NCBI RefSeq assembly: GCF_963676685.1
Contig: NC_092352.1
Span: 13,330,001 to 13,394,000, forward strand
Reading direction: 5' to 3'
Length of the DNA stretch: 64,000 bases
From: Mytilus edulis
Taxonomy: Eukaryota
Part shown: piece by piece, positions 23,747-49,700 of the stretch
How positions within the stretch are numbered: the first letter of the stretch is position 1
Layout: each line of letters opens with the position of its first letter
The notes under the pieces: generated by a model
Told to the model about the DNA's origin: nothing
The model's database searches: none
What the model saw: only the letters and a program-made list of their open reading frames with translations
Program-made: the position numbers and the translations under genes

Positions 23747-26700
23747 CTACACAGCTTCAGGTGACTTTCGTCGTTCCCAGATCATTCTATGCTTTTGTTT
23801 CATGTAAGCCTCAACAACAGTAGAGTTATATCCTAAATCACCATCTACAAAGGATGAATAAATTATACTTAAAAAAAACATGCAAGAATAAAATCCAAGT
23901 TGTATAAATCACCATCTACAAAGGATGAATAAGTTATACTCAAAAAACATGCAAGAATAAAATCCATGTTGTATAAATCACCATTTACAAAGGATGAATA
24001 AGATATACTTTTAAACACAACATGCAAGAATAAAATCAAAAGTTGTAAAATCTCAGTATTCTTTAAAAGACTTTAAAAAATGTTCTCTTCACACAAGGAT
24101 AACTTTTTTTACAAGAAAAATTAGGTGCACAACCACATAGTGACATACTACCTGAGAAGTCTGAATACATTACAAGAAATGTTTTCCAAAATTTGGACTA
24201 TAAAAAAAGGTTTGCAATATATTGCAAGTAATGTTTTCAAAAATTTGTACTGCAAAAACAAAGGTGTGCAAGTTTCAATGTAACAGGGTTGGGAAGGTGA
24301 GCTGTGGCTATAGTTTATTAAGTTACATTCGTGTAGTATTTTCATACATTCACATAGAACATGTGTACCAAATTGTACCAAACTACCATCATTATGACAA
24401 TTGATGGAACTGTGTCCCTATTTAAAGTGTACTCAAGTCTAATATGTCACTTCAGTAATCTGATGATCATTCTATTTTGATATTTTTATTAAATTTGTTT
24501 ACAATATCTGATCACTGCCAAAAATTCTATTTATCCATTTTCCAAATAAAGTTTAGTACAATTTATAAATTAGGGTAAATGAGATTCAAACTAAACCTTG
24601 ATCACTGACCCTTGAAATGTGGTCCATGTGATGTGACCTCTATCTGATGGACATGTAGACATTGCGAGAAACTTATACACAAAACATAGTTATCCTATTA
24701 CTCATATAAAGTGAATATTTCACATGAACAAACAATTTTTTTTCTAGAAGTCACTGAACCATAAAAATAAGGTCAAGGACATCAAACATATGACGGATGG
24801 AAAGTTTGTAATAAAAGACATCTTTACACAAGGTATGAAGCATTTCGCTTCTACCTTCTTTAAAATAAAGCTTGATCAAAATAATTTATTAGTTATCATA
24901 GAACATCTTTATAATCACTTCCTTATTTCTGTCTTAAACTTTACATGTACTGATTAAAGTCTGATTTTGTATAAATAACATAAATTGTGTAATGCTAACA
25001 AGTTCAGATTTGTTAAAAATGTTACTGACAATGAATAATGCAGTCTTCATTTTAATTAAGGTGGTACCCAACACCTTACTTAAATTGATTTGGCTTGTAT
25101 AATTTTCATAAAAATTTGACAAAATATTTACTTTTTTTCAAAACAAATGAACCAATCACTTTCTCAGAAAAAAATGGTTGGATACATAGCAGTTTGACAA
25201 ACAGTGGTGTAGCTTGCATGTATGCTCAGATGCTCAAGCATCCACATCATTTTGATAAAAAAAAAATTAAAATAAAAAATTAAAAAATGTATTCGTAGGA
25301 GTTGAACTCGTATACTTGTATCCAAATGTAGCAAGGATGGAGATATGAGGATAATGTCCAATCATTTCTAAAGCAGTATGCACGGTCTTTTATGTATGAT
25401 CAATTAGTTTATGAAAACAAGATGTATCAATCGCAGAAAAGTGTTCTGACTTTCTGACTTCTTTCGTAAAAAGTCTATGTCGTCAGCTATGGCAAGCCCA
25501 GACAGAGGATGATGACAGGCAAACCCGCGGAGATGTCTCATCTGAAATTTGGGCCAAGCGGAGAGATGGCTTCTCAACTGACGTAGCAACGTTACTAACA
25601 ACTAAACCACCATTTATATCCTAGAATCGTTTCCTCTGACTTGAAAGAAGAAGTGATAAAAACATGAATTGAAAAAAAAATAGAGTATGATAATTAATGG
25701 GCCTATATTTACCCGTTTCCATCTAGATACAAATAATATTTTTTCAATAAAAGAAGAGCCAATGCCCCCATATTGCAATTTTTTTTTTCTATCCAAGAAG
25801 CAAGAATATAACTAAAAATAATATCTAAAGAGAAATAAAAGCTTCAGAGCAAATGCAATGGGATTTCCATTATAATTTTTATTTCAAAGGGGCATAACCA
25901 GTTAAAAATATTTGATCAGGACTTATTTTTGATAATGTCAAAGACATTGCTGATGATTTAAGTTTTTTAATAAAAATCTGGAAAGAATTATACACATGAG
26001 AGTGCCAACAAGACCGAACAGACGGAGGGACGGACGCCCGATATTTCCATGTCCCCTGCAACGCGTTAAGTGAAAGAATAATCACTTCGGTTCCTATATT
26101 CTGAAGTTCCAGCATATACAGAAGTGCTGCTGTAATGGGTCCATTTTTGAGATGTCAAATATAAGATTTGGTGGAAACTTTTACATCAAATATTTATCAT
26201 GTTTATGAATTGAATGATAATAGTTTTGAGAAAACAATAAAATTATGTTGGAAATATATGAATGGTTGAGTATTTTGAAATTACATAAAAACTCTAACAA
26301 GTGATGGATTCTGGGGGAGTACACGTGCAAAAAGGAAATGTCAGAAAAAGATATATAATTTTCTGCATAAAAAGATCTCTAAAAAAAAATTCGCCTCGCT
26401 TTGCTCGCCAACAGTTTGGCATCCACATCATTTCAATCCTGGCTACGCCACTGACAAACACTAATTTTGATCATTGAGGAGCTTAATATATCCTTAACAA
26501 TACAATGTGATTAAAACGTTTAGCTGATTTTACAGAGTTATCTCCGTGTAGTGTTAGGTACCACCTTAATAAAAAATCTTACAACACAGGCCAGTACAAA
26601 TATTGTTGTACCAGCAAAATTTTTCTTAAAGACAGATTTCAAAGTTCAAAGTTTTTTTGTGAAGAAAGATTATTTTGATGAGAGAAACAACAGTGTTTGG

Positions 26701-29700
26701 ATACATACATTTTATAAACCAGTTTGTAGCTGCCTCCTCACTCACTGCTGCTATGGAGGCACACTTAACAGGAGCGTCTTCTCCCTCATAGTAATTACAA
26801 TCTATATAACGATCTTTCAATATTCTTACAATTTTACTGTCCACCATTCTGAAAATATGAAAAAAAGAACTTGATGACTTTAATTTGTACCTATATATGA
26901 AATGAAAGGAATGCAATAACTAGTAATGAAATTGAGATTTGTTTTTAGTTTTTTTTACATCATAGTTTAAAATCTTTTGATATACATAATGCATGTAATA
27001 TTTACTTACAGTACCAACACACAGTGTTCCAGCTAGCATGAAATGGAGGGGCGCCGCGCCCCGCCCCCGAAATTTTGCGCCCCTCTGCCTTTTTTAAGCG
27101 CCCCTGCGCCCCTCTGTGCCCTTTTGAAAAAAAGTTTAAAAAACAATCTTTTTTCCTCATATAGTCGCCATTTTGTTTAGTTCTTTATACACACACTTCA
27201 TTAAGACAACAGATTAAAATTGTTGACACTTGTTACCTGATTATAATCACCTATTTGATTAGAGTCAATTACTTAATCAGGTGAAATTTACGACCCTGTC
27301 TAATCCCTTTACCCTGAAGCACCAAACATCGAAGTTAAATGAATTGATTATTTTAACACCTGACGATGCAAAAGATAATTTATAAAATAAATGTGAACGG
27401 TGTTCATTTCTATTGTATTTGTTATTTATTATGTCATTTAAAAAGAATCATTCCAATAGGTCAAAATGCATGAAACATGATGTAACTTTGACCTCCGTAG
27501 CAGAGTTCAAAAAATTTATGGGTCACTGAATATTCACAATTCAGATCGTTTTTGTTTTGATGTTTTTATTTTTTAAACTAATCTTTCAACCTAGTTTTAA
27601 TCCAGAAGAAAGTAAAAACATTGCTTGACTGTACCTTAAGTTGAATATCTACATCCAAATTAGATTAATTAAAACTGTAATCCATGATCACAAATTTGAA
27701 TGCTTTGTTTACAATTGTTGAAAGCCATGTGCTTTTTGGTGGGAACATTCGGGAAACCCCTTATTAACAGGAAACAGTTACATTTCATTGTTATTTATAG
27801 ACAGTAGGAATTTCATTTTGGAAATCATTTTGATTACAACTGCTAAGATTCATTCATGAAAAATTATAATAATTTCTTGGGGTGAAACTGATAATACTTT
27901 TTTATTAAAATAATTTACATCTAGGGGTATGGAAAGGGGGGCTGTTTTTTTTTGGGGTTTTTTTTCTCAATAATATTACAAATATATATAAAGTTCACCA
28001 GTCTGAAAATACATGGTTAAATGGATTTTATTTCTGAAAAACTCATGTTTATTTAATTCCTTTATTATTTCCATCATAATAAGAAACAAGCTACATGTAT
28101 ACGGTATTTCAAACATATATTTTTGGCTTTTATATAAGAACATTCAAGACTATTAATATGTATGTGCCTGCAGTAAAAACAAACCTGGTAAGGCCTAAAA
28201 AAATTCTACAGGGCCCTTGAAAAAACTTTTGGATCCAGGCTGGCCTTCAGAGAAAATGTTAAGTATTGTTCCTGACTGTATTGCAGATTTATGTGAAGTT
28301 TTTAAACTGACATGCACAATTCATTTCACAAGTGTAATAAAAATAATTCTACAAAACAAGGCAGCGCATCGCGTTGCAAATTCATCTTAGACCCACCATG
28401 CATCAAGAAATATGTCTTTATGTGGTAATATTAAGTATTTGATTTTTTTCAGTGAGAACGCGCTAAAGTGCCCTTTTTAAAAACGCGCCCCTCTATTTTC
28501 AAATCCTAGCTGGAACACTGAACACAAATACCTGAACAGTTCTCATGGACAGGATCTTTAATTTGTTTGGACTATCTTAAATCTACAATCAATGTCAAAT
28601 TTCCATAATGATACAAAAATATAAAGATATGACACACAACCACCACTTTCAAACAGGGATAAACTAGCTTTTTGATTCTAAAAATTGATAAATAAATTAA
28701 GCATTGACTGCCAAAGATTGGCCAACAACTCCTTGTCTCCTGACAACAATTCTTTTTTTTCAAAACACATGAAGATATGAAATTAGGCAACCACTGACAA
28801 AGTCCTTGATTGTGGCAAGGTTAAACTAATAATTACTATACTCTAAAATCTCATCCCTTTACTGTTTCAATCTCATCCAATGGACTTACAAAAGGTTCAA
28901 GAAAGAACACACAGTTGACTCTCATTGTCTCAAACTAATTTCAAACTTCATGTTCTCTCAAATTTAAATGTATGTCTATCCCGATTTAAAGATTTACCTT
29001 ATATTTACTCCTGATGTCTCAAAATTCTTGCAATTTCAATTTGTTTTAGTCACTTGCAGTCAGTCGGATAAACTTTTATGTAACAAGAGTGAACTGTATG
29101 TTCAAATATATGACAGAAAAAGTACTTTAATTTTTTAGTTATTTTTTAGTTATATTCAAGTAAAATATAAACAAAAACAGGAGTACCGATACAAAAAAAA
29201 CGATATAAATCATATAATGGTCACAGTTACCAGTGGATATGATGTCATGACCATTCTTCCTTCTTCTAACGTAGATGAACTTACTTGTCTCTTTTCCACT
29301 GTTCCTGTGCTTCGTATATACATGCTGTTTCATTTACATCACACTGATCAATTGTTGGTACTCGGTTAAACCTTCTGTGGTAGTATGGGTACTTTTTCTG
29401 GAATGGCTGAACAAATGTTTCTGTAATGATAAAAAAATTCTTTACAGTGTACAACATATATTAGTCTGCTTAAGAATTCAAATATTTTAACATTTCAGGC
29501 TTTCAATTTTTATGCTGTTGAGGGTTCCTGATAAAAGTAGATTCAGAAAAGCATGCAAGACTAAAGTGGCAGATTAAGAGGGCTTACACACATCCCCCTT
29601 TTTAGATTGGAATATAGTATCCTTTTCTAACATAAACTCATACTCACTTTATGCAATTTTGCCTCCACTTTAAAAATATCTGGAAAACCCCCCTGCTTTG

Positions 29701-32700: not shown

Positions 32701-34971
32701 ATTGCTTTGCTTAACAAAGATATGCCAATATAGAAAATAGAAGTTTTTGCTCTTTATGTTTTAGCCACAAATGTTGATGACACAGAGCTTTGTTCCCACC
32801 ATGCGTATGGGCTTTATTATTATTATGAACAATAATTAACTTTTTTATGGAATTCATCCTTCAATGTTTGTGTTTTTGGACAATAAAAAGAAGTTAAAAG
32901 CTACTACATACATTAAATTGGGAAGTACCCATGCAGCAGCAGTAATAAAAACATATGTTTCAGAAAAGGAATCATGTGCCGTGTTACACTGCCGGTTCCA
33001 AGTCGGAATAAAGGAGTAAGGAAGTAATTTTCTTTTAACTGACGCAATCGTATGTTTTATTTTTGGCGCAAATGAAACCATCTAATTTTAAAACATGTGG
33101 CGCAAACGTAGCATTTGAGAAAAAAAGTTGTGGCGCAAAATGACGCATTTTTGGCGCAAACGGATCTCTCCCATCAAGGGAATCTCAAGTGTTTGTTAAT
33201 TTTATCACCTTCTGCAGGACCGAAAAAAAGTGCACGGCACAATCCAGTTAAGGGAGCTACCATTTGATTTTTATGGGGGGGCTAGGATGAAAAATTTTGT
33301 CCTGCTTTTTTTTTTAGTTGTAATCTCTGTCCTGCCTTTTTATTTTTTACTCTATTCGGTCCTGCCTTTTTTTTTACTAGTTTATCCTGACTTTTTTTAC
33401 ACAAATTGTCATCCTGCCTTTTTTTTTAACAAGTTTCTCATCCTGCCTTTTTTTTTTACTCAAAACTCCTGTCCTGCCTATTTTTTTCAAATTTCATCCT
33501 AGCCCCCCCATAAAAATCAAATGGTAGCTCCCTAAGTTATGAATTTTCTAAATCATACAATGCATTTGAATTCTATTTATCTAGAGCATGCTCATTATGC
33601 TATATGCCTTAAAACTTTTCCAGATACACAGGTTTGTCTGTACTCTGAGTAAATTTTGAGGTGAAAATACGGCCATTTTAGCCATAGGATCCACATGTAC
33701 CTTAAGGATTATATACCCTTGTGTTGATTCAATGCTAAACCTATGGAAATTTTATAGAAAATCCACAGCCTTTATCCTTGCACTATCATATTTAGCAATT
33801 TGATGACTGATAGATATAGGATTATTGCGTGTAGTGCTAGCATTGATTTCAATAAAACAAGTTTATTAATGTAGTTATTGGTAAAAACAAATCAAAATAT
33901 GGAACAAATCAAGTACACCTTGTAGGGTGCACTTAACTTTGGTGACTCAGCAGAGGTATTTTGGAATTTACAGGTTGGTTTGAACTTTTTGTAAAAAATA
34001 AACACTAGCACATCATAGAAAAGCAAGTGAGTAATCTATGTTTCAAATTTTATAACAAAAATCTCTGTATTAAAGGCTGTGGATTTTCTATAAAAATCTT
34101 GGTTTATTTGCCACAAAGTATTCTTTTTCTATTAAATGAAATAAAACAGTAAATAATAATGCTTTGCATCAAGTTTCCCCTTGGTGTATGTACAAAATGG
34201 CCTATCTCTATTATTCGTTATATCTGTATCTCAGATCTGTAGTTTTGATACAATTGAAGTTTGAAAAATTCGTTCAAAAATGGCTACAGAAGGTATCATA
34301 AACCTTAAGGCCTCAGATCACAATTAATTCCCTTTGTTCGTGGTCTAGGAATATAGTTCCCAATTATTATATGGGGTATTTCTTCCCAAGTAATCTGTCT
34401 ACTGTTTTCTTTGAAATGTTTACTATTTGAGTGGTCCTATCAGTTGCATATATATTGAAATAAGTAAAACATGTGGAAAAAAATGATTGTTGAAAGTGAA
34501 AGTAGTGATTTGGCCAAAATGAAAGTAGGGTAGAAATCAGCCTTCGTCATTTATTCAAGATTCAAATCCTACCATTGGCATGCTAATAGGGCCCTCAAAA
34601 GAAAAAGCACTGATGGATTGTACTGGGACAAGCATATTTAATTATTTTATTAGAATAATAATGGTCTATAAGCAGTTAAATTTATTTCATGTTTGTGGTG
34701 GTGCAAATTTTTTAATTCAATTCGACTTTAACTAAAAAAATGCATTGTAGCCAAGGGGAAGAATAATTGTGTTCTGAGGCCTTAAACAGTTAAAAGTATA
34801 CTATAACAAAACCGACTTTCCGTGCCTGATATGACAAATTATTCTTCCATACTAGTTAAAGAAGACAACTCATTTACCCTTAACCCAAGATGTTGGACCA
34901 TCAAGAATTTTGTACATTGCCACCAGACCACGATCTACTCCTTTTGGGGACCTTTCCTCATTATTAGCCAT
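23747..34971 (-). CDS. NDUFB10: NADH:ubiquinone oxidoreductase subunit B10 (PDSW), 155 aa, 4 coding exons
   Basis: Exons 34971-34878, 29420-29285, 26848-26709 and 23844-23747 join in phase. Translation: MANNEERSPKGVDRGLVAMYKILDGPTSWVKETFVQPFQKKYPYYHRRFNRVPTIDQCDVNETACIYEAQEQWKRDKMVDSKIVRILKDRYIDCNYYEGEDAPVKCASIAAVSEEAATNWFIKYGDLGYNSTVVEAYMKQKHRMIWERRKSPEAV*. Family hallmarks are YYHRRFxRVPTIDxC, the twin Cys pairs and WFIKYGDLG...AYMKQKHR.IWERR. AATAAA lies near 23662-23667 on the minus strand. Confidence 0.95.
23834..24047 (-). repeat. Three tandem copies (about 70 bp) of the NDUFB10 last intron-exon junction
   Basis: AAATCACCAT(C/T)TACAAAGGATGAATAA...CATGCAAGAATAAAATC...GTTGTA occurs three times. 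Confidence 0.9.
25060..26565. mobile_element. TTAA-flanked (Kolobok-like) MITE containing a nested TIR element at 25202-26453
   Basis: Outer: TTAA|GGTGGTACCCAACAC ... GTGTTAGGTACCACC|TTAA. Inner: CAGTGGTGTAGC ... GCTACGCCACTG with 5-bp TSD ACAAA. Confidence 0.85.
27022..28520. mobile_element. Non-autonomous hAT-like element with 6-bp TSD
   Basis: TIR CAGTGTTCCAGCTAG / CTAGCTGGAACACTG; AACACA on both sides; subterminal GCGCCCC motifs. Confidence 0.9.
32441..33172. mobile_element. MULE-like MITE with 8-bp TSD
   Basis: ATCAAGGG at 32433-32440 and 33173-33180; subterminal TTTGCGCCA / TGGCGCAAA arrays in inverted orientation. Confidence 0.8.
33252..33532. mobile_element. MITE with TAA TSD (Harbinger/Zator-like)
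   Basis: TIR of about 40 bp, GGGAGCTACCATTTGATTTTTATGGGGGGGCTAGGATGAAA, with its inverse; internal TCCTGCC(T)n repeats. Confidence 0.9.
33750..34095. mobile_element. TIR element
   Basis: TTTTATAGAAAATCCACAGCCTTT / AAAGGCTGTGGATTTTCTATAAAA. Confidence 0.75.
34309..34781. mobile_element. TTAA-flanked Kolobok-like MITE
   Basis: TTAA|GGCCTCAGATCACAATTA ... TAATTGTGTTCTGAGGCC|TTAA. Confidence 0.85.
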
Positions 34972-35448
34972 TTCATGCAGTTCATCCACAGATACGAATC
35001 CTTCATAAATGACCTTCACCGATACCTTTTCTGTTTTACGGCATTACCCTGGAATAAAATACCATATATAATGAGGTCATATAATAAAATGAACAAATGG
35101 GAAGAAACAGTTTGGGTTTGAATGCTATAATCGAGCGTATAAAACGTTATTATTTAGTTTAATAAGTGTTGCCCTTTATCTGATTGTCGTAATGGTGAGG
35201 CCGTAAGCTTGAAGGGTAAATTACGGAAAATATTTTTTTTTATATGTATCTTTTTGATTACTTTAGAAAAGGGAAATACAGTTATGACTTAAAATTTTCT
35301 TGAAGTTGATTTTTTCATCTTCATTGATGTAATTCAAATATTCTCTATGGAAAGTTTGATGATTTATATTTCCTTATTGCACCTCGTCTGTGGGAAAGCG
35401 GAAGTTGCCGTACACATCATCTTTCTTTTTGCATGCCGAATTCAGACG
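34972..35448. promoter_or_regulatory. Bidirectional promoter/5'UTR region of NDUFB10 and RPL3, with an ETS-type site and a TCT/5'TOP tract
   Basis: Divergent ATGs at 34971 and 35449; GCGGAAGT at 35398-35405; pyrimidine tract CTTTCTTTTT at 35421-35430, typical of ribosomal protein gene starts. Confidence 0.8.
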
Positions 35449-38400
35449 ATGGTAACGTGTACTTTCTATCCGTTTAAATCCATTCATTTTCCACGATATA
35501 AATGATAATTTTATAGCCTCATTTACAAAATTAAACATCTAATTACATCTCTATTAGTTTTGATTTAAATTTGAGGCATATTTTATATTTAAAACTGTCC
35601 TCGCGCTGATGTCTGAAAACTGAATATTTACCATTTGCCGAAAAAGTTGCAACTTCACTTGTGTCCCTCTTTGATTATAAGTATATCTTTAAAACCGAGT
35701 ACCAAGTAGAGCTTTTACTTCGAGTGTAATGTTATTTATATTACCAATTTGTTTGTAGAAAATAAACCCGATCCATTGGTTCTTTAAAGCAAGACCAGAT
35801 AAATATAAAATTTACCCCATTCTCGTTAACCAACTCTCCTAATATAATGAAAAAGGTTCAATTCCAGACAACTCGCCCAACTAAAATTATTCGCTTGAAC
35901 TTTTGACAAATTTCAATCACTTTCCATTGAGGTAGTCCAAATAATTGTGACGTCTGGCAAGGCTATTTTAATTTTTTTCTGGGACGCCTTCAATGTGGGA
36001 TCAAAAAAAGTCAAAATCGAAAAATACCCACAGCAGACGGCATGATTATCTGGACTACCATTGAGGTATCAGATATTATTTTGTTTTATGATGTTGAAAT
36101 TTTACTGGAAGCTGTATGGTATCCAGTAATGGCAGACAAATAGCGATAAGGTGTATTACAGAGCATATTAAAGGACTAAAGAAATGCTATCGCTCAACAA
36201 CTTTTGTACCTGTTAGTCTTGAGAGATGACAGTTTTGAATATTGCTGAGCTCATAAAGTCCATAAGCAAAGTTGTTAAGTGTTTATGTAGCTCTTCCTGG
36301 ACATTGTCAATTCTTTAATTTGGCTGTCTTGAGTGCTGGCCAAGTACTTCTCAATCTGTTGTGAATTTCAAACACTGCATTGTGGCTTAAACATGTGTAA
36401 CAGAACTATTTTTTTTTGATACATGTATGACTGCAATATTTTTTTTAAATTTGGTCGTATGTAAAGAGAAATTGAATGTACATGATATCTGTATAAAATA
36501 AATTGTTGATTCAAATTGTAAGAAGTTTTATTTTATTTTTATATTTTCAGTCTCATAGAAAATTCTCGGCTCCTCGGCACGGTTCTAAAGGCTTCCTCCC
36601 CAAGAAGAGGGCCAAACGTCACCGTGGAAAAGTGAAGTCATTTCCCAATGATGACAAGAACAAGCCAGTTCATCTCACAGCATTTATTGGATACAAGGCT
36701 GGAATGTCCCATATTGTCCGAGAAGTTGATAGACCAGGATCCAGTATGTTGATTTTAAAGTTATTTTATAGTTAATATAAAAGGAATATTATGAGACTAC
36801 ATTTGTAGTAAGGACATGTATTAAATCAAGTACCATAAGTGTTCTTCCTGGAAGGTTTTTGAATGCAAAACCTTGCTATTCATATCCATATAGTTTCTAA
36901 TTTCCCGTGCCTTCCTTAATACTTTTACCCGACAATATCAAATATCAAGGTAGTTATTTACAAGCTTTTCAAATGGTATAAACATTTCACTGATGGAAAC
37001 TAGATCTGTGACAATTTTGTAACTTATTCTCATAAGATTCAATAAAATGCCAGCTACAATTTCGCAAACGATTTCAGATGATTGATGGGGCAATCACCAG
37101 TGCTTCTGCCCACAAGTCAAATGCAGTCTTCACACTGAGTGGCAGCCCAGGCTGGTAAAATTGCTCTTGGGCCTGTTAAAATCATATCTACAGGCCAACA
37201 GAATCTTAACTAAAAAAATTCAAAAATTGAGCTCCGGGTCTGTATAGATTTTGAAGTTCATCGTGAAGACTGCAAATGACATTTTTCCTAGACTGGGACT
37301 TTGGACTACTCATTGAGTCTTGTTCAGACTATTTTGATGAATATAAAATTTAATAAATCATGTGGTTATTTTAAAGTTGATTTATCAGGTCAGGAATAAC
37401 CACCAATTGGTGGATTATACCTCAATTGACGTATAATCCACCAATTGACATATAATGGTATAGACCAATTGGTGTATAATTCATTGTTTTTCAAAACAAA
37501 TTATTCTACCAAAATGGAGCATTGTTTTCTTAAAACCATATTATGGTATGAAAACTTGTCAAACATTTCTAGTTTAGTATAGTGACATAACATATTGCAT
37601 TTAATCAATAATTGTATTTGCAGTTTCTTCTATTGTTATCTTGTCAATTCTTGATTGGCAAATTTACCTGTAATCACCTGTCAATGGACATCATTATTGT
37701 CTGCAGTCATGTGATCATGAGTACAACTCCACAGGTGAATGGAGCTCTTTGTTAATACTTGACTTTCATTATCTAAAGTCAATCATGGTCAATAGTACAA
37801 ATGTTTCAACAAAAGAATTGATGTACACATGCATTCTCAAGAGATGCAGCAGGCTTTGACAAAACTGAAACTTTCGGAGGACTCAATAAGGGTCATAAAA
37901 TAGGTTGCAAGTTGCAAAATCATGCTCCTATCTCACACTAGCATTTTATTACAAAACATTTGCATTATACGTCAATTGGTCTATACCAATATACCTCAAT
38001 TGGTGGATTATACGTCAATTGAGGTATAATCCACCAATTGGTGGTTATTCCTGACCTGTTTATACAAACTGACATTTCAATTTTATTTTATAGAATCTCA
38101 CAAGAAAGAGATCGTAGAAGCTGTAACTATTTTGGAAGCACCACCCATGATGGTTGTAGGTGTAGTTGGATATATTGAAACTCCAAGTGGTTTAAGAGCA
38201 TTTAAAACCATCTTTGCTGAACATCTTAGTGAAGAGTGCAAAAGACGTTTCTACAAGAATTGGTATGAACAAAAGTTCTTTATATATTGCTGTAAAAATG
38301 ATACTTCACAGAAATTTATGAAACAACACAGGGCCTAGGTGTGTGATCTCTGTCATTATCTCTATGGATTTTCATTTCTCACAATTTTATTATTTAAAAA

Positions 38401-41400
38401 TTCCAGAGCAATTGAAAGACATATTTTGGAGTTTGTTTCTCATGGAAATCATTGTTACCAGGGAATGTAGTTTTGAAAATTTCCAATTTGAATGATTGTA
38501 CAGAGGGGGCCTTTATACTAATTGATATTAAAGCTACAAGTCAAAATCTAAACACTAGTAGAACAGACTAGATGATTAACATATAGTATATCTGTCTAAA
38601 GGTGGTTGAAAGTTCAGGATTGATATACATATAATTATACATTTATTGAATAGAACTGATTTGCTAATTTGTTTTGTGCACTCTTTCTTTTTCAATATTT
38701 ACAGGTGATTGATGCCACGAGATTGACAGTGTCTCATTATCAATCACTAGGAAAGTGGCTCAACTTGAAGCTCCTCTTGGTTTTAAACCAATGAGCTTGT
38801 TACAATGACGTTTCCGCTCATGAATATAATTTCATGATGAAACGGTTCATATTTATTTAAGGTACCGATCAAAGAAGAAGGCATTCTCCAAGTCTGCCAA
38901 GAAATGGCAGGATGAGGCTGGAAAGAAAGAGATAGAGCGTGATTTCAACAAGATGAAGAAGTACTGTAGAGTCATCCGAGTCCTTGCACATACTCAGGTA
39001 AGGCAATTATTTCGACACAAAATGTAGATACAGTGCAGTCCAGTGTATCCGCGCACCCAAGACTTGTGATTTCACTTTGTTCAACTAATAAAACCAACAA
39101 TTGGATAATACTTTTATTTCATAAAATCTTCTGTTTGTATGGTTTCACCTTTAAGATTTTGTGTAATGTATGTCCAAAATTAGGGGAACCCTGTTCTGAG
39201 AGTTCCTCAAATGTCTGGTGATATGGTGCATGCCTTCCAAAAATATCTTATTTTGAATAAAGGAAAGATTTTCTACTACAAAATTTGGCTGAATGTTAAC
39301 CAAGCACACTGCCAAGGATACATAGCAAAAGTTATTTCCATCTGATATAAATTTGACTTAAATAACACGAATTTTATCTGATGAGGCCAAATAAAAATAT
39401 ATGTGTGGTTCCAGTAACCCTACCGTCCCTACTTTTTCGGCTGAAAAATAGCCTACCCTAAATATTTTATTGTCATTTTTCATTAAGCACTGTTAAAGTC
39501 AGAATGTTGCTCCCATAGACTCAATTTAAAAAAAAAAACATAAAATAAAAAAATATCCCTACCTACCTTAACTTTTTTTCAGATGTAACTGGAACCACAC
39601 ATACTTTTTTATTTGGCCTGATGTAATTATTTTAATCGAAATTGGCCATATATTGTAAATCAAGGGATTGGAGTTGTTTATTTGATGAAATCCGCTAATG
39701 CGCTGCATCACCAGCCGCGGGGACTGGGGACTCCACTGTACGTCTTTAAAGAAACACCACAGTAATCTTAATTTGTGGTAGCGAGCTGACTGAGTGCAAG
39801 AGGTCTGGTTTAAATACCTGGTGCAGTCTAACCAAAACTGCACGTTCAAAATGACACAGGTTACATGACAACACTCGAGACATAATAAATGTAAGAACTA
39901 TAGAAACTTGTTTCTAATTTCTGGATAATAGACTTGTAAAGTAGAAAAAAATCATTGAAAAATACAGAAATAAAAACACAGTGAGAGAAAAAAAATCTAA
40001 ATGATGTGTTATTACCAGATAGGCCCATTCTAGCATTTGAATCTAATACAGCATAGCATAAACATCAAAATATTGATCAACCCTAAATGAAAATATCATT
40101 CTTTCTATTTTTGGTGGCATGATTTACGTTGTGGTGCTTAGCTTATATAATATAGTACTGAACATTGTCTTTATTGCAGACCAAGTTGATGAAGAAACGT
40201 CAAAAGAAAGCCCACATTATGGAGATCCAAGTTAATGGTGGTACCATCTCCCAGAAAGTAGACTGGGCTAGAGATTACTTTGAAAAGAGCATCCCAGTAA
40301 AGAATGTGTTTGCCCAGGATGAAAACATTGATATCATTGGTGTAACCAAGGGTAAAGGAGTAAAAGGTAAGATTGTAAACAAAAGAAAGGTGTTGAATAA
40401 CATTGTTTCAAAAAGTTTTAAAATCCACTAGTACAGAAACAAAACTTGTCCCTCTATATGGCTACAATTTTTTTTTTAAATTTTCACCTAGTCCAAATCA
40501 ATAATTACTAGTCTGGGGCACAAGACTAGTGGCTAACAGTGCAGACTGGTACAAGTATTACAGTAGCTTTCTTTTAAAGAGACTGTTTATTACATCAGTT
40601 CAAATCATGAAGAATTTTGTCATATTTAATATAACATCTGTTGAACTTGTATTCTTAGATTGAGTTTCTGTTAAATCTGTCTCGTGACTACTGAAAGATC
40701 CACTCGTGTTAAAAGGATAAATGCAAAAATATCAAAAGTATTGGTAAAGCTCTCTGTGACAACTCCCAACATTATCCTCCAGTTTAATATATATAATGTA
40801 TTATGTTAATAGGTGTAACATCCAGATGGCACTGTAAGAAATTACCAAGGAAGACACACAAAGGTCTACGTAAGGTAGCCTGTATTGGAGCTTGGCATCC
40901 AAGTCGTGTCCAGTTCACTGTGGCCAGAGCTGGACAGAAGGGTTACCATCACAGGACTGAAATCAACAAAAAGATCTATCGTCTTGGTGATGGATACCAC
41001 ACTAAGGAGGGCAAGCTTATCACAAGCAATGGTTCTACTGAATATGATGCTGATGAGAAGCCAATCACTCCAATGGGAGGATTCCCTCATTATGGAGAAG
41101 TATCAAACGACTTTGTCATGGTTAAGGGATGTTGTGTTGGACCCAAGAAGAGAGTTGTCACACTTAGAAAGGTACATTTTATTTAAACTTCAACATCATT
41201 ATGAAAAAAAATGGAATTGCTGTCAATGAAGAATAAAACAAGTATGTGTTAATATTATAACACTGTGTTATATACAGTTAATTATTTTTGTTAAATTTGA
41301 GAATCAATCAATGATGAAACACATGGAAAGTATCCCTGCCGGGATACTCTGAATTTGATGAAGATTTCACCCATGTTGCCTTCCTTCTGATGATTGATTC

Positions 41401-42335
41401 TTGAAATACATGTCAATTTTAAATACAGTTAAAATAAATACTATCTGGGAACACATGCACATTGTTGCTTTACAATAGTATATAAATTTACATTTTATGT
41501 TTGTTTCTGTTTACAGTCTCTCTTGGCATCGTTCAAAAAGAAGCAAATGGAGAAGATTGACCTGAAATTCATTGACACCGCCAGTAAATTTGGTCATGGA
41601 CGTTTCCAGACATTCAAGGAGAAACACAACTTTATGGTAGGTTTAATTGTATACTTTCAGGCATCATTATTTAAATAGATATATGAAGATGTGGTGCGAG
41701 TCCCAATGAGACAACTCTCCATCCAAATACAATTTTTAAAAGTAAACCATTATAGGTCAAGGTACAGACTTCAACACAGAGCCTTGGCTCACACCGAACA
41801 AAAAGCTATGAAGGGCCCCAAAATTACTAGTGTAAAACCATTCAAACGGGAAAACCAACGGTCTAATCTATATTTAAAAAAAAAACGAGAAATATGAAGT
41901 AAACACGATAAATAAAGGGGGTAAAAATAAGTTGTAGGGAGTTGCAATATAACCCTTGTTAATTTGGAGCTGTTAATCTAAATGATGAAACACGTGGATG
42001 ATGTCCCTGCCAGGATATCCTGAATTTAGTGAAGATTTAACCATGTTGCCTTCCTTCTGATAGATTAACTATTCAATTGTTGGGCTTTCACAAACACCAA
42101 ACCAGGCAAAACTACAGATTACTAAAATGATTTCGGTAATACTTTACAAAATCACTATATAAACGTACATATTTATTACATTTAAGTGTTGTTTTATTTG
42201 CATTTCTCTTGTAAACAGGATGATACTCTTATTTAAAAAGTATCCACCATGCTCACCTGCATTTCTAATATATGTGTTTTCCTATTTTAGGGTCCACTCA
42301 AGAAAGATGCTGTAGCAAAAACAGAGGCTTCTTAG
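35449..42335 (+). CDS. RPL3: 60S ribosomal protein L3 (uL3), 403 aa, 8 coding exons
   Basis: Exons 35449-35451 (ATG), 36551-36743, 38094-38262, 38862-38997, 40180-40366, 40813-41171, 41517-41636 and 42291-42335 sum to 1212 nt in frame. Translation [13 protein letters not shown]...[30 protein letters not shown]...[13 protein letters not shown]...GPLKKD. AATAAA at 42355-42360. Confidence 0.98.
35932..36058. mobile_element. Small MITE in RPL3 intron 1
   Basis: GTAGTCCA ... TGGACTAC flanked by a CATTGAG direct repeat; its core is also present, inverted, at about 32293-32329. Confidence 0.8.
37124..37272. mobile_element. Short MITE with 6-bp TSD in RPL3 intron 2
   Basis: CAAATG|CAGTCTTCAC ... 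GTGAAGACTG|CAAATG. Confidence 0.8.
37386..38058. mobile_element. Fold-back element with TIRs of about 95 bp and a 5-bp TSD in RPL3 intron 2
   Basis: TTTAT|CAGGTCAGGAATAACCACCAATTGGTGGATTATACCTCAATTGACGTATAATCC ... perfect inverse ...GTTATTCCTGACCTG|TTTAT. Confidence 0.92.
38705..38861 (+). promoter_or_regulatory. Candidate unproductive (PTC-containing) 5' extension of RPL3 exon 4 via an alternative 3' splice site
   Basis: Branch-like GCTAAT at 38663-38668, pyrimidine tract at 38681-38693, CAG at 38702-38704. Splicing from exon 3 gives TG|G TGA (Trp, then stop). The segment contains three hairpins. Confidence 0.65.
39385..39618. mobile_element. MITE with 3-bp TSD (TGA) in RPL3 intron 4
   Basis: GGCCAAATAAAAA...TGTGTGGTTCCAGT / ACTGGAACCACACA...TTTTTATTTGGCC. 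Confidence 0.85.
41301..41400 (+). ncRNA. SNORD83: Box C/D snoRNA, U83/SNORD83 family, copy 1 (RPL3 intron 6)
   Basis: Terminal stem GAATCAATCA/TGATTGATTC; C box ATGATGA at 41311-41317; D' CTGA at 41349; C' TTGATGA at 41355; D CTGA at 41387-41390. The guide TGTTGCCTTCCTT matches vertebrate U83 as I recall it and is complementary to 18S AAGGAAGGCAGCA. Confidence 0.9.
41972..42069 (+). ncRNA. SNORD83: Box C/D snoRNA, U83/SNORD83 family, copy 2 (RPL3 intron 7)
   Basis: Terminal stem GTTAATCTA/TAGATTAAC; C box ATGATGA at 41982-41988; D box CTGA at 42057-42060; identical guide CCATGTTGCCTTCCTT; paralogous to copy 1. Confidence 0.9.
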
Positions 42336-45300
42336 AAATGGGACATTTCAAATGAATAAAAATTCTGTGATGTAATTGTACATGTCCATTTTTGTAAAAG
42401 TTTACTCGTCAAATAACTTCGTTACTAGTGACACATTTTTATATTGGGCCAGTTGAAGACCAATTGGTGGCCTTTTGCTGTTGTCTGGTCATTGATCAGG
42501 TTGTTGTTTCTTTGACATATTCCTCATTTCCATTCTCAATTTTAGTTGAGTCGTTTTAATAGTGTTGCTATAATGACTATATATGTTCTCATTTGTATGC
42601 AATATATACTACTGGATGTTAAACACCAACAAATGAAAAAAATTATCAGTTTATCAATGTGCATGTGGTGTGATTACCAATGAGATGACTATAAATCAGA
42701 CCAAATGTTGAGGGGTCACCTATTGTATTTTTTACTCATTTCCTTCAACAATTTGAGAGAGAAAACCACCTACAGCATTATGAATTACCAAGAAAAGACC
42801 AAGGTATGCAAGTCTGATTTAGAAAAATTATATACAACAGCAAACGAAATAGTGTAAAGATTATGTATCCAGGCACAATGTACACCAGTCACTGCAACTT
42901 AACTCGAAAAATTGCAGTTGGTATAAATCTATCCCCACACAATGAAAAAGTTGCCAACAAGAAAAAAAATTGTCAAAGATGTTTTCAAATCCCCATTGAT
43001 ATGACATGATTTGGCTTCTTTGCTTTAAATCTACAAGTTTGCCCGATTGGCATGCCGCAGTAGGATTGAACAAATATATGGCCGGGTCTTTGTTGCTGTT
43101 TTCCAAATTGAAATAGAAATCCGATGTAATTAAATGCCAATGAACAATCACAGATTGTTAAAGTAAGCCATGAGAACTTCAAATCGGAAATCACAGATTG
43201 TTAAAGTTAGCCATGAGAACTTCAAATCGGAATCAATAGACCACAATTGAGCGTATATATGTTGTGGCATAAATTCTCGTTTATTTTGCAACTTGTCTTG
43301 ACACTTCAGAATTGACTTACTACTGAAGGATAGGTTTGAATTGTGGTATACAGTATTCAAGAGTTCCCGGTCATAATGTCCAGTGGCAAATATTTCTGCC
43401 ATCACCTCAAGTTGTAAGCAGCTGTATGGGTTTAATATGCATTAATCAATATTCAAATTTTGTCCCATCAAACTTGGGAGGATCCTTTCATCAACTACGA
43501 GACCAAATGACTTTCTTCGGTCTTGCATCATTTTTCTTGAAATCCTCTAGCAATAGTTAGGTTATATTGTAATCACTGTATTCATATAGAGGGGATTGAG
43601 GTAAGCAAGCTACAAGAAACTGGATTGGCTTACAATTTGAAACAACAAACGGTATTCTTTTACTTTGATATAATAATGTTTTTCTAATTACCGAATGGTG
43701 TACGAGTATCTTGATGGGCCATGTCGTTTGTACCTTGTAGAAAGTTTCCAAAAACACTTGTAAAAAAGATGTGGTATTAATGCCAAAGAAACCAAAATGA
43801 CAAAAATTACAACTAGAGGTCACCATTAAAAACTAACGGGCTTATTTATATAAGAAAATGAACGATAAATCACTGAATTGAAGGCACATACATACATTAA
43901 TTAAATTATTATGATAATGCGGCGGATCCCAACCCTTTCCTTGACCTTGGACAGTGGTATAAGAACGAACTATAAAAATCAGTTGAAAAATTCTTAACGG
44001 GTACTTGTACATCCCAACAACAAAAAGACACTAGGAACAGATCTGAGAGAACTAACAGCTAGTCGTGCATCTAAGACTAAATTATCAATCCGTACACATC
44101 CAACATTCAATGGATTTAGTGTAAAGGAGTCATAAACAGTCTGAGAAAAACATAACCTTCTGCAATGCCAAGATACAGGTATCGACAGATTATAGACCTT
44201 GTTTCGCTATATGACTTAATTTTGATTTCATAGTTCCATTAAACGAAACATTGCTGTCACGTTTACCTAACAAAAACAATGGACTAAAAATAGTTATCAA
44301 AAATTCTATTACATGTAAAAAGAATTTGCCACCGAACTTTTTTTTAAATGATTCATTTAGAATCCTATCAATCAGTCCTCAATCATTTCCGTCAACAAAA
44401 CTAGTATTTGAAATAATTAAAAAATCTTAAAAGTTCTTGTGTGGGAAAAACTGATGCCAAACTTGAGTAAACAACATCCTGCCATAGGATTTACAAGTGA
44501 AGTATCACTGAGATATAATAAACTAAAGTGTACAAAAATGATGATAGAAAATCATTTGACCGATACATAGTTGCCAAATTAAACTTTGGTCAATTATGTG
44601 AAAATATATTAAATAAGATGTGTTTTATTACTAATGGTCCTCATTTAAGTCCGATCAGTTTATGCAGGTCTGTCACCCAACTACTACCAGAAGCAACTCT
44701 ATTCTACCCCTACATTTTTTTTAATTTCTGAACAAAAATCAAGCGATAGATTTTCATTGAATACTTGCATGTCGTTTATTTCAATGAATTTACAATTGGA
44801 AAAATATAGAACCGAAAATGTGTTTCTCGTCCAGAATGTTGATGATGGACACCTAGATAAAATGGACAATTTGCATACGAATGTGATGAACTTTAGTGTT
44901 TCTATTGACAACAATTTTTAAAAATAAATTTCCCTCTTAACCAGTCGACAGACATACCTTAGTATGGATATTTTAAAGTTTGGTTTTTAACTACACTTAT
45001 ATTTGATATAGTGCTAGCAGAGCAGACCGACAGATTTGACAGTAGCAAAGCTACATTGCTTGTAAATTTTTATTTTCAACATCAATTTTACTATGCTGAA
45101 TTGTTCGTCACATGGGGGTTACCCCCCCCCCCCAAAAAAAAAAATAATAAAAAACACAACCCCTGCTTACACTTTATAATCCAGTGCTTAGAAACGTACA
45201 ACTATTGATCAATAACCGGTTGATTTATTTATAATTGTTGTAAACTCGGGTTATGAAAATCTGTCTATGTATACATGTTTAAACAAGACAATAACAATCA

Positions 45301-46759: not shown

Positions 46760-49700
46760 ATGTCGTCGGTAAATTTGCCGCCAATTAAGAACCTTGTTAA
46801 ATTCACGAAATCCACAAAATCAATCTCAGCTCTTGATACTGAGAACGTTAGTAAGAGTAGAAGGAAATCAGGAGTAAAGAAAAGCAAAGAATTCGATCCC
46901 GATAAAATTGCAGCAGAAGTTCGATATGCGCAACTGCAATCAATATTTGGTAATGCAGAAGACGGTTTAAACATAAAAGAGTTTAAAAGAGCAATGAGAG
47001 AAACTCTTGGTAACAAAATGACGGATGATGAAATCGAACTACTCTTCATGAAGGTTGATGCTAACTGTGACGGAGTGGTCGACTGGGAGGAATATGTAAC
47101 ATATAATTTATTAGAATATCAAGGGAAGTCACTGATGAAAGAGATGATGAAAGAAATACCTTTTCCTCACGAACCAAAACAAATTCCGAGTCGTCACCGA
47201 GAGGTTATTGTTTCGATCCTATTTTACCCCAACGTGCGGAGACGAGACGGTCGTTGTTATATAGACCATACAAATGGTAGGTATGTTACGATCAGCAAGG
47301 AGGGAATTTTGTCAATTTGGAACGTGCATATGAAGTTAATCACAAGTTTTAATACTATATCTGAGATTGGAGACAGGGCAACACAGCCATGGTTGATCGA
47401 CTTGGCGTGCATTTACAATGTAGGAATGGTAGCAATTTCGTCAACAGATCGGGACATAACTGTCTTTGATCTACAGGGAAACAATTTTAGGAAGAAATAT
47501 CATCTCATAGGACTAGACGACTGCATAACATGTATGCATTACTGGGTAGACTTAAATGATATGAATGAAGCAAAACTCCTTTGGGGAGACACATCGGGAA
47601 GCGTTTGTGTAATTATCTTCAAACAATGCCTTCGTGGAGGCCTGTTTGGTTCATTTGGTGTGAAAAGGGGTGGATTTAAAAGAATTAGCTTACCTGAAGT
47701 TATAAGGGGTTTCTACAAAGGTGCAAGAGGATATAGATTTAACCGAGTTCATAGTGATTGGGTGTTGCGTTTAAGGTATATTCCAGAATTAACTGCCTTC
47801 ATATCTTGCAGTCAATCTTCTGATAACTCACTTTGCGTGTACGAAATCGGAAAGAAAAAGACGAACTCAGTGATTAAGATCAATAAGGGAATTCTTTGTT
47901 TTGATTACTGTCCAGGAAATAACATCATTGTTACTGGTGGTATGGATTACTGTATCCGAGCATGGAATCCCAAAGTTAATGCAAAGTCTATGTATGTGTT
48001 GAAAGGATACACTAAACCAATTAATCAAGTTGTAATTAATACCCGAAAGAGCCAGATCATTGGTATAGACAAAAGACGTACTATACGAGTATACGACATG
48101 AAAGACCAATCATGTCTTCAGCATGTTAGTGGCAGAGTGGTAAAACTTGGGAAAGTTCCATTGTCGGCGGTTTACTTTAACCCAGTGTTACAGACACTAA
48201 TCATAGCTACAAATCATCTTGCCGTGCTTCAGAAATCTAATGAAGAGGAAAGGGCTGCAGATATCGAGTCTCATACAAAACCAGTTGTTTGTGTTCTATA
48301 CAATAAGCTCTTCAAATTCGTAGTTAGTGCTTGTCAGGATTCTGTGATCAGTGTTTGGGACCTGTATACTGGAGAAAAAGTTATACATGCTGCCAATGCA
48401 CATGTCCGTGAGGAGAAGGGCATCATAGTACCAGTAGAAATAACATCAATGGCATTTGATGGTCCACTGCGACGTGTTATCACAGGGGCCATGGACGGTA
48501 GTATCAAAGTGTGGAACTTTAATAACGGAAGTTGCTTGCAGACATTCAACACTCCGGATGGAGTAGAAATAACAGGCATAGTTAGTATCAATCATCGAAT
48601 ATTTGCCACTGGATGGTCAAGGAAGATGCATATTTTCATTGACGGTAGAGGAGAAGAGCATCGAAAGGACTGGAGGCAGAAACACAACGAAGATATCCTG
48701 TGCATGTCTTATTTAAGTCCCAATATCATCGCAACTGGTGCTTACGATGGAGATGTTGTTGTGTGGTCACGGGACACTGGACACGTTTACTGTACTTTAA
48801 ATGCAGGAAAGAGTATAAAACCGATTGGAGATACAAAAAACAAGAACAAGGATGACAGACCAGACACAAGCCAAAGCGGAAACTCGGAAGCTAAATCAAG
48901 TGAATTAGGTTTTTCATTTAACATTTTTGAGAATCTTGCGTCAGAAGAAATGCTGAAAAAGAGAGTAAGAAAAGCGAGTTTTTTACATAAAAACATAGAC
49001 ATCTTAAACAGAGTTAAAGGAAACGTCTTAATGAAAGAAAACAAATGGTCACAGAAAATCGGTCGCTTAGATGATACACCAGTAGAACATCCGTTACTCC
49101 CATTGTATAGGAACCAAGACGATTCACCAGTAGATGGAACAAATCAGAAACCTCCGAGTCGAGTGGCGAGTAGACGAGAAGATTATGATGATCTTTGTAA
49201 AATGTATGAGTCGTCTATTGAATGTATCTTATTTTTAGAATCGCGTGATAGAGAAAGCGAGGAAACTGCCATCTTAATTACGAGTGGAGCAGAAGGATGG
49301 ATTCGTGCCTGGTCAATTTACCACCAAGGAGGCCTTTTAGGTCAATTCAATGCTGCACACAAAGTAGGAGAAGGTGTACATACAATGTGTACTGACGAAA
49401 AAAATAAACTGCTATTCACAGCAGATAGCTGTGGATATGTTAAAATGTGGGATTTGTCAGAATATTGCACAAAGAAAGTGCTTACCAAGGCACGTAGGGC
49501 AAAGCGATGGAAGTATCTTAATGATACGTTCACATTTGTTAAATTTTCATATTGTTATGAACAGCCACCGGAAATCCTTATCTCATCAAACAAAATGCCA
49601 TCCAACATCAACAACAGACCACCACCAGCATCTTCATTGCCAAAGATAACACTAAAATGGCCCTTACTTGTGAACTCATATCGGGCACACACAAAAATTA

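What the first reader, a model, noticed from the sequence alone, without database searches (positions are those of the whole stretch)
34878..35451. RPL3 and NDUFB10 are head-to-head, echoing the vertebrate RPL3L-NDUFB10 pair
Seen: the two start codons are divergent and about 480 bp apart. The interval is free of recognisable transposons although both flanking introns are full of them. Known (from memory, to verify): human NDUFB10 lies divergent from the muscle-specific paralogue RPL3L on 16p13.3, whereas the U83 snoRNAs sit in RPL3. Inference: this window shows the ancestral bilaterian unit (NDUFB10 + RPL3 + U83), which vertebrates partitioned between paralogues. It may also couple ribosome and complex I subunit transcription.
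Basis: partly seen in the sequence, partly recalled or inferred. Interest (0 to 1): 0.8.

Follow-up and report, generated by a model that had tools for sequence, protein, structure and literature searches.

The report
Ancient head-to-head RPL3–NDUFB10 gene pair
In this mussel genome the genes for ribosomal protein L3 and the complex I subunit NDUFB10 start back-to-back about 400 bases apart, and the same neighbourhood turns up in a clam-like animal, a non-mammalian vertebrate (next to the RPL3L-like copy) and, in tandem, an ant, so it is probably an inherited bilaterian gene pair and not a new kind of system.

Summary
RPL3 (+) and NDUFB10 (−) are divergent, with start codons 478 bp apart (35449 and 34971).

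RNA reads put the RPL3 start on a classical pyrimidine (5'TOP) tract at C35421/C35425. NDUFB10 5' ends lie at about 34977–35048. There is no RNA at all across 35111–35413, and the two genes are read from opposite strands. The interval is single-copy in the 1.37 Gb genome and CpG-rich. Both flanking introns carry repeats with well over 1,000 copies each.

The evolutionary reading is partly supported. In 72 NDUFB10-bearing metagenome contigs:
- A clam-like contig has the same head-to-head pair, with ATGs 273 bp apart.
- A non-mammalian vertebrate contig has NDUFB10 head-to-head with a divergent, RPL3L-like uL3 gene.
- An attine-ant contig has the two genes adjacent but in tandem.
- At least two contigs have a different upstream neighbour, so the linkage is patchy.

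Two U83-like snoRNAs sit in mussel RPL3 introns, just under Rfam's thresholds. A paper places human U83A/B in RPL3.

Shared transcriptional control is untested. The two core promoters are separate, and no intergenic sequence is conserved between mussel and clam-like contig.

The parts
34878..34971 (-). NDUFB10 exon 1, coding part (ATG at 34971, donor after 34878, phase 1)
   Evidence: Translation. Loose ends at 34878 read into exon 2. Frame continuity with exon 2.
34972..35048 (-). NDUFB10 5' leader and dispersed start sites. It holds three upstream ATGs in one frame, forming a 23-codon uORF (from 35006) that overlaps the main ATG.
   Evidence: Molecule ends at 34977, 34990 and 35019. RNA contigs reach 35030 (X8) and 35048 (X1). 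Depth falls from about 80 to about 1 beyond 35010. uORF translation.
35049..35420 (.). Untranscribed, single-copy, CpG-rich intergenic core between the two start sites
   Evidence: Zero depth across 35111-35413 in 4 runs. One genomic copy. CpG o/e is 1.1 against a window mean of 0.5.
35064..35071 (-). TATA-like TATATAT/TATATAA about 25-30 nt upstream of the distal NDUFB10 5' ends. Weak evidence, because the region is AT-rich.
   Evidence: Motif scan; position relative to contig ends.
35398..35405 (+). ETS/GABP-like GCGGAAGT, 20-27 nt upstream of the main RPL3 start
   Evidence: Single occurrence in the window, 0.29 expected.
35421..35451 (+). RPL3 exon 1: start on C35421/C35425 within CTTTCTTTTT (5'TOP), a 24-28 nt leader, and the ATG as the only codon
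   Evidence: Molecule ends at 35421 (7), 35425 (41) and 35427 (23). The X8 contig starts at 35425 after adapter sequence. Joint to 36551.
36551..36743 (+). RPL3 exon 2
   Evidence: Pfam Ribosomal_L3 E 7e-29. Joints and loose ends at 36550 and 36743.
38096..42340 (+). RPL3 exons 3-8. Approximate positions: 38097-38270, 38857-39012, 40177-40374, 40812-41186, about 41540-41640, about 42295-42340.
   Evidence: Pfam and HMM matches exon by exon. ORF lists.
41303..41398 (+). U83-like C/D snoRNA in RPL3 intron 6
   Evidence: Rfam snoU83B 34.3 bits (gathering 35), E 2e-4.
41974..42067 (+). U83-like C/D snoRNA in RPL3 intron 7
   Evidence: Rfam snoU83 35.8 bits (gathering 50); snoU83B 32 bits.
29285..29420 (-). 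NDUFB10 exon 2
   Evidence: Pfam NDUFB10 E 2e-18. Splice sites read.
26709..26848 (-). NDUFB10 exon 3
   Evidence: HMM match. Sequence and splice sites.
23747..23844 (-). NDUFB10 exon 4, including the stop codon
   Evidence: HMM match. ORF 23747-23881.
34380..34800 (.). High-copy repeat in NDUFB10 intron 1, about 80 bp from the exon 1 donor
   Evidence: At least 1400 first-look candidates; the 40 scored copies are 93-97% identical.
35919..36221 (.). High-copy repeats in RPL3 intron 1
   Evidence: At least 2126 first-look candidates. Heterogeneous reads and loose ends.

Best explanation
This is a genuine divergent housekeeping promoter region of about 400 bp joining RPL3 and NDUFB10, and the neighbourhood is inherited from an early bilaterian ancestor. 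Shown: two separate core promoters face away from each other. RPL3 starts on a TCT/5'TOP pyrimidine tract, with a single ETS-like GCGGAAGT 20-27 nt upstream. NDUFB10 starts at dispersed sites 373-448 bp away on the other strand. Nothing is transcribed between them. The interval is single-copy and CpG-rich, while the adjacent introns are filled with repeats. Shown by comparison: the same head-to-head pair in a clam-like contig, NDUFB10 head-to-head with a divergent (RPL3L-like) uL3 gene in a non-mammalian vertebrate contig, and the two genes adjacent but tandem in an attine ant. Inferred: (1) The pair was adjacent in the bilaterian ancestor. (2) After the early-vertebrate duplication of RPL3, the copy that became RPL3L kept NDUFB10 as neighbour, while RPL3 kept the U83 snoRNAs. 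(3) The pair persists mainly because two essential promoters packed into a few hundred bases leave almost no room for a harmless breakpoint or insertion. Co-regulation through shared ETS/GABP-type input is possible but not demonstrated.
For: Gene identities and structure. Start sites, splice joints, opposite strandedness and the silent interval. Single-copy interval against repeat-filled introns. CpG o/e 1.1 against 0.5. Single ETS-like site. L053 has RPL3 exons on the minus strand upstream of NDUFB10, ATGs at 2174 and 2447, and an NDUFB10 closest to the clam Mya among named proteins. L063 has uL3 exons on the minus strand and NDUFB10 on the plus strand; its NDUFB10 N-terminus matches mammalian NDUFB10 from residue 1 at E 1e-10; its uL3 exon 2 scores 104.6 bits against vertebrate uL3, while the mussel's scores 112.9. 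L055 has the RPL3 stop at about 4806 and the NDUFB10 ATG at about 5675 on the same strand, and its NDUFB10 is 87% identical to that of the ant Pseudoatta argentina. Literature: the 'RPL3L-NDUFB10-RPS2 locus', Rpl3l 'emerged in early vertebrates' (PMC10287911), and SNORD83A/B in human RPL3 introns 5 and 7 (PMC3412847).
Against: The linkage is patchy. L039 has a TBCB-like gene as the divergent neighbour, and L033 has a TAO-kinase-like gene upstream. Termite-like contigs (8.7 kb upstream), L048/L049, L062 and L037 (5-10 kb upstream) show no RPL3. Taxon assignments of the metagenome contigs rest on similarity only, and L053 has no named close relative. The RPL3L identity of the L063 gene is inferred and was not tested against a reference RPL3L. 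The ant arrangement differs in orientation. Intergenic sequence is not conserved between mussel and L053 beyond chance.
Confidence: 0.72

Rival explanations
1. The interval is a truly shared bidirectional promoter. Common elements (for example the ETS/GABP site, known as NRF-2 for respiratory-chain genes) co-regulate cytosolic ribosome and complex I subunit output, and selection for this coupling is what has kept the genes together.
For: Starts are under 1 kb apart with one CpG-rich, repeat-free interval. There is a single ETS-like site. An ETS core (GGAAGT) also lies next to the RPL3 start in L053. Both genes are expressed in all four runs, with an RPL3:NDUFB10 depth ratio of 6-17.
Against: The ETS site sits 20-27 nt from the RPL3 start but about 350-420 nt from the NDUFB10 starts. 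The two core promoters are of different types (TOP against dispersed/TATA-like). No intergenic sequence is conserved between mussel and L053 beyond chance. In vertebrates the partner is muscle-restricted RPL3L while NDUFB10 is a general complex I subunit, and in the ant the genes are tandem, so adjacency survives without a shared promoter. Co-expression was not tested.
Confidence: 0.25
2. The adjacency in mussel and vertebrates is coincidence or convergence; there was no ancestral unit.
For: Several NDUFB10 contigs lack RPL3 nearby. From memory, Drosophila and C. elegans have the genes unlinked. The orientation differs in the ant.
Against: The same two single-copy genes are immediate neighbours in contigs assigned to three phyla, and three of the four cases share the same head-to-head orientation. 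The chance that a given pair becomes adjacent in a genome of over 10,000 genes is about 1 in 10,000 per lineage (inference).
Confidence: 0.06
3. NDUFB10 is driven from a distant promoter through an upstream non-coding exon, so the short distance between the ATGs is misleading.
For: None found. Upstream ATGs in the leader might suggest a complex 5' end.
Against: No read joint enters NDUFB10 exon 1 from upstream. Contigs end at 35030 and 35048. Depth is zero from 35111 to 35413 in four runs, and the strandedness fits.
Confidence: 0.03

Closest known systems
Vertebrate RPL3L-NDUFB10 neighbourhood (human 16p13.3)
   Same: A uL3-family gene and NDUFB10 are immediate neighbours. They are head-to-head in the vertebrate contig L063. 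The preprint names the locus 'RPL3L-NDUFB10-RPS2'.
   Different: The partner is the muscle-restricted paralogue, not the housekeeping RPL3. The spacing is larger: at most 1.7 kb from uL3 exon 2 to the NDUFB10 ATG in L063, and several kb in human from memory. No U83-like snoRNA was found in the covered part of the L063 gene. An NRF-1-like GCGCATGCGC lies upstream of NDUFB10 in L063 but is absent from the mussel interval.
Conserved ancestral microsyntenic pairs with 5'-5' orientation, e.g. HSPD1-HSPE1 (Irimia et al. 2012, PMC3514665; Davila Lopez et al. 2010, PMC2871058)
   Same: A divergent pair with a very short intergenic distance, kept across phyla, involving housekeeping or mitochondrial functions.
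   Different: The two products do not work in one complex or pathway. The pair was not found in the texts or held supplements searched. Its orientation is not kept in the ant.
Ribosomal-protein gene promoters with a TCT/5'TOP start and nearby ETS/GABP sites
   Same: The start is on a C within a pyrimidine tract, the leader is short, the first exon ends at or just after the ATG, and an ETS-like site lies close upstream.
   Different: Binding of any factor is untested. Knowledge of GABP sites in mammalian RP promoters comes from memory and was not checked here.

Membership tests
Bidirectional (divergent) promoter gene pair | Two genes on opposite strands with 5' ends facing | tested here: met
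   RPL3 is on the plus strand and NDUFB10 on the minus strand. The stranded run X21 shows opposite read orientation for the two genes.
Bidirectional (divergent) promoter gene pair | Transcription starts less than 1 kb apart with nothing between them | tested here: met
   Starts at 35421/35425 and at 34977-35048, so 373-448 bp apart. Zero RNA depth across 35111-35413. The interval is single-copy.
Bidirectional (divergent) promoter gene pair | Shared regulatory elements or co-regulated output | not tested
   Only four runs were laid, and both genes are expressed in all of them. No perturbation or tissue series was available.
Conserved ancestral microsyntenic pair (sense of Irimia et al. 2012) | Orthologues adjacent in several distant animal lineages | tested here: met
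   Mussel window; clam-like L053; vertebrate L063; attine-ant L055. Taxon assignment is by similarity only.
Conserved ancestral microsyntenic pair (sense of Irimia et al. 2012) | Relative orientation conserved | tested here: inconclusive
   Head-to-head in the mussel, L053 and L063; tandem in the ant L055.
5'TOP ribosomal protein gene | Start on a C followed by an uninterrupted pyrimidine run | tested here: met
   5' ends at C35421 and C35425 in CTTTCTTTTT.
snoRNA U83/U83B (Rfam RF01179, RF00593) | Score at or above Rfam's gathering threshold | tested here: not met
   34.3 against 35 (U83B) and 35.8 against 50 (U83). Full-length matches with C and D boxes and the conserved UGCCUUCCUUCUGA stretch. 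Works like U83; formal membership falls just short.
Vertebrate RPL3L (for the uL3 gene of L063) | Groups with RPL3L and not RPL3 in a tree or by best match to a reference RPL3L | not testable with these tools
   No vertebrate RPL3L chain appeared among the solved-structure matches, and full-length searches need a joined model. Indirect evidence only: lower similarity to vertebrate RPL3 than the mussel's RPL3 has.

The most novel reading that the evidence does not exclude
The RPL3-NDUFB10 divergent promoter is a regulatory unit more than 500 million years old that ties cytosolic ribosome output to respiratory-chain output through shared ETS/GABP-type input. Vertebrate RPL3L, not RPL3, would then sit at the ancestral locus beside NDUFB10, which could bear on the reported link between RPL3L-containing ribosomes and mitochondrial activity in heart.
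Probability: 0.1. Interest if true: 0.6.

Novelty: new member of a known kind. Interest (0 to 1): 0.4.

Why it matters
It adds a well-documented example to the short list of non-paralogous gene pairs that have stayed neighbours since early bilaterians. In this case experimental start-site evidence comes from a mollusc. For people working on RPL3L, it suggests that the muscle paralogue, not the housekeeping RPL3, kept the ancestral neighbour, while RPL3 kept the U83 snoRNAs. It also offers a compact (about 400 bp), repeat-free invertebrate promoter suitable for a dual reporter. It does not reveal a new mechanism.

Tried and rejected
- The look-up of encoding contigs was tried for NDUFB10 of Branchiostoma floridae, Lingula anatina, Ylistrum balloti and Parasteatoda tepidariorum.
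- Scans of genome contigs and viral contigs with the NDUFB10 alignment gave nothing.
- Literature: no paper or held supplement links RPL3 or RPL3L with NDUFB10 as a syntenic pair.
- A search for the contig accession prefixes in papers gave nothing.
- The cluster look-up of fragment proteins and a protein search for L053 gave no names.
- k-mer sharing between the mussel and L053 intergenic regions is at chance level. The shared TGCCGTAAA, at similar distances from the NDUFB10 ATG, is not significant.
- NRF-1, YY1, Sp1, CRE, E-box and DRE motifs are absent from the mussel interval.
- Molecule starts at 34990 may be clipping artefacts, because some reads carry small insertions at 34991-34996.
All searches were exon by exon, which kept full-length RPL3 relatives out of reach.
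Full report
**What is in the window**

The window is AT-rich animal DNA (33% G+C). I did not verify the genus.

On the plus strand, Pfam Ribosomal_L3 matches a series of exons from 36.5 to 41.2 kb. On the minus strand, Pfam NDUFB10 matches exons at 29.4, 26.8 and 23.8 kb. Both genes are single-copy in the 1.37 Gb assembly.

- RPL3 exon 1 carries only the ATG (35449-35451), followed by a GT donor.
- NDUFB10 exon 1 runs from ATG 34971 to a donor after 34878. It joins exon 2 (29420-29285) in frame.
- Read exon by exon, the NDUFB10 coding sequence is 94+136+140+98 nt, about 155 codons.

**Transcript evidence**

I laid two raw RNA-seq runs and two sets of RNA contigs on 34000-37000.

- The RPL3 exon1-exon2 joint (35451/36551, GT..AG) is seen in 101 reads of X21, 8 reads of X24 and a contig of X8.
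- RPL3 molecules end at 35421 (7), 35425 (41) and 35427 (23), inside CTTTCTTTTT. The X8 contig begins at 35425 directly after adapter sequence. This is a classical 5'TOP start with a 24-28 nt leader.
- For NDUFB10, loose ends at 34878 read straight into exon 2 (244 reads in X24, plus contigs in X1 and X8).
- NDUFB10 5' ends lie at 34977, 34990 and 35019, and contigs reach 35030 and 35048.
- Depth falls from about 80 to about 1 beyond 35010, and is zero in all four runs from 35111 to 35413.
- In the stranded run X21 the two genes have opposite read orientation.
- No joint enters NDUFB10 exon 1 from further upstream, so the "distant promoter" refutation test fails.

The two starts are therefore 373-448 bp apart. 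The 34990 ends may be clipping artefacts, because some reads carry small insertions at 34991-34996.

**The interval itself**

- 35050-35420 occurs once in the genome.
- The neighbouring intron stretches 34380-34800 and 35900-36250 gave at least 1400 and at least 2126 first-look candidates.
- CpG observed/expected is 1.1 in the interval against 0.5 for the window. That puts it in the top 7% of 477-bp windows.
- GCGGAAGT occurs once in 64 kb (0.29 expected), at 35398-35405, which is 20-27 nt upstream of the main RPL3 start.
- A TATA-like TATATAT lies about 25-30 nt upstream of the distal NDUFB10 ends. This is weak evidence in AT-rich sequence.
- NRF-1, YY1, Sp1, CRE and E-box motifs are absent.
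- The NDUFB10 leader holds three upstream ATGs in one frame. They form a 23-codon uORF that overlaps the main ATG.

**Relatives elsewhere**

All searches were made exon by exon.

An HMMER search with the 44 residues of NDUFB10 exon 2 gave 190 proteins. This is the main gap in the work.

Instead I scanned JGI metagenome contigs with an alignment of 40 NDUFB10 proteins. This gave 72 loci. I then searched them with the mussel's RPL3 exon peptides. Three loci carry RPL3-family exons.

*L053 (9.3 kb, marine).* RPL3 exons 2-5 lie on the minus strand upstream of NDUFB10. Reading the sequence, RPL3 again has an ATG-only first exon after a pyrimidine tract (ATG at 2174). NDUFB10 starts at 2447, so the ATGs are 273 bp apart. 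Among named proteins its NDUFB10 is clearly closest to the clam Mya arenaria (174-176 bits against 123 or less for others). A protein search found no named close relative.

*L063 (8.85 kb).* A uL3 gene lies on the minus strand (exon 2 at 3668-3483) and NDUFB10 on the plus strand (ATG at 5374).
- The NDUFB10 N-terminus aligns from residue 1 with pig, cattle, sheep and mouse NDUFB10 (E 1e-10). It aligns worse with the human chain (27 bits). So this is a vertebrate, and neither mammalian nor human.
- Its uL3 exon 2 scores 104.6 bits against vertebrate uL3. The mussel's exon scores 112.9 against the same chains. This fits the divergent paralogue RPL3L, not RPL3, but that identity is inferred.
- A GCGCATGCGC (NRF-1-like) lies about 60 nt upstream of the NDUFB10 ATG.
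- A candidate ATG|GT first exon for the uL3 gene at about 4241 would put the start codons about 1.1 kb apart.

*L055 (15 kb).* RPL3 ends at about 4806 and NDUFB10 starts at about 5675 on the same strand, so the genes are adjacent but tandem. Its NDUFB10 is 87% identical to that of the ant Pseudoatta argentina, which makes it an attine ant.

*Negative loci.*
- L039 has a TBCB-like gene as the divergent neighbour, and L033 has a TAO-kinase-like gene upstream.
- Termite-like loci have no RPL3 within 8.7 kb upstream and 6.5 kb downstream.
- L048/L049 (5.5 kb upstream) and L062 and L037 (10 kb upstream) have no RPL3 either.

The linkage is therefore patchy, not universal.

**snoRNAs**

Two full-length U83-like C/D RNAs lie in mussel RPL3 introns 6 and 7, just under Rfam's thresholds. 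A paper places human SNORD83A/B in introns 5 and 7 of RPL3, and places the sponge relative in RPP0 (PMC3412847). No U83-like match was found in L053, L055 or L063. L055 has a SNORA73-like match in an RPL3 intron.

**Literature**

- A preprint names the "RPL3L-NDUFB10-RPS2 locus" in human.
- Rpl3l "emerged in early vertebrates" (PMC10287911).
- No paper or held supplement that I could search describes RPL3 or RPL3L with NDUFB10 as a conserved pair. The supplements of the main microsynteny survey are not held.
- From memory only: the human genes are divergent and a few kb apart, and the two genes are unlinked in Drosophila and C. elegans.

**Interpretation**

The same two single-copy genes are immediate neighbours in contigs assigned to molluscs (two lineages), a vertebrate and an insect. 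Three of these four cases are head-to-head. Independent origin is very unlikely, so an ancestral bilaterian linkage is the best reading (about 0.7).

The idea that vertebrates split the unit is descriptively consistent: NDUFB10 stays with the RPL3L-like copy and U83 stays with RPL3. The route to that state (genome duplication with reciprocal loss, or a local copy) was not tested.

Transcriptional coupling is not shown, and several results speak against a strictly shared promoter:
- The two core promoters are of different types and about 400 bp apart.
- The single ETS-like site hugs the RPL3 start.
- Nothing in the intergenic sequence is conserved between mussel and L053 beyond chance.
- The adjacency survives in vertebrates with a muscle-restricted partner, and in the ant without a shared promoter.

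Passive retention seems at least as likely as selection for co-regulation. By passive retention I mean that two essential promoters in a few hundred bases leave no harmless breakpoint.

**Verdict**

This is a confirmed, neatly documented divergent housekeeping promoter and a probable ancient microsyntenic pair. It is a new member of a known kind, of moderate interest.

Noticed in passing
window 46760-50239 (+): An uninterrupted 1159-codon ORF encodes an EF-hand pair followed by many WD40 repeats (Pfam). A single-exon gene of this size stands out in an intron-rich genome and may be a retrogene.
   Followed up: no
window 23834-24052: A 69-bp tandem repeat (3.1 copies, 88% matches) includes the 3' splice site and first codons of the last NDUFB10 exon. 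This places near-copies of the acceptor region just upstream in the intron.
   Followed up: partly
window 34929-35006 (-): Three upstream ATGs in one frame in the NDUFB10 leader form a 23-codon uORF that overlaps the main start codon. Transcripts starting at 34977 would skip most of it.
   Followed up: partly
window 34380-34800: A repeat of about 400 bp has at least 1400 candidate copies. The 40 scored copies are 93-97% identical. Several lie in arrays spaced about 1.3 kb apart on other chromosomes (for example C7:23335207/23336529 and C4:89767829/89769157/89770481), and the repeat is represented in RNA reads.
   Followed up: no
window 1105-9552 (-): Several ORF pieces encode ankyrin repeats, presumably exons of one ankyrin-repeat gene downstream of NDUFB10.
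   Followed up: no
L055 1887-2097 (+): A SNORA73-like H/ACA match (53.7 bits, gathering 74, E 2e-10) lies in an intron of the ant RPL3 gene.
   Followed up: no
L063 5308-5317: A palindromic GCGCATGCGC (NRF-1-like) lies about 60 nt upstream of the vertebrate NDUFB10 start codon. No such site exists in the mussel interval.
   Followed up: partly
window 34991-34996: Some RNA reads and one X1 contig carry 1-nt insertions in the NDUFB10 leader, while an X8 contig matches the window exactly. This points to two haplotypes or closely related species among the public runs.
   Followed up: no
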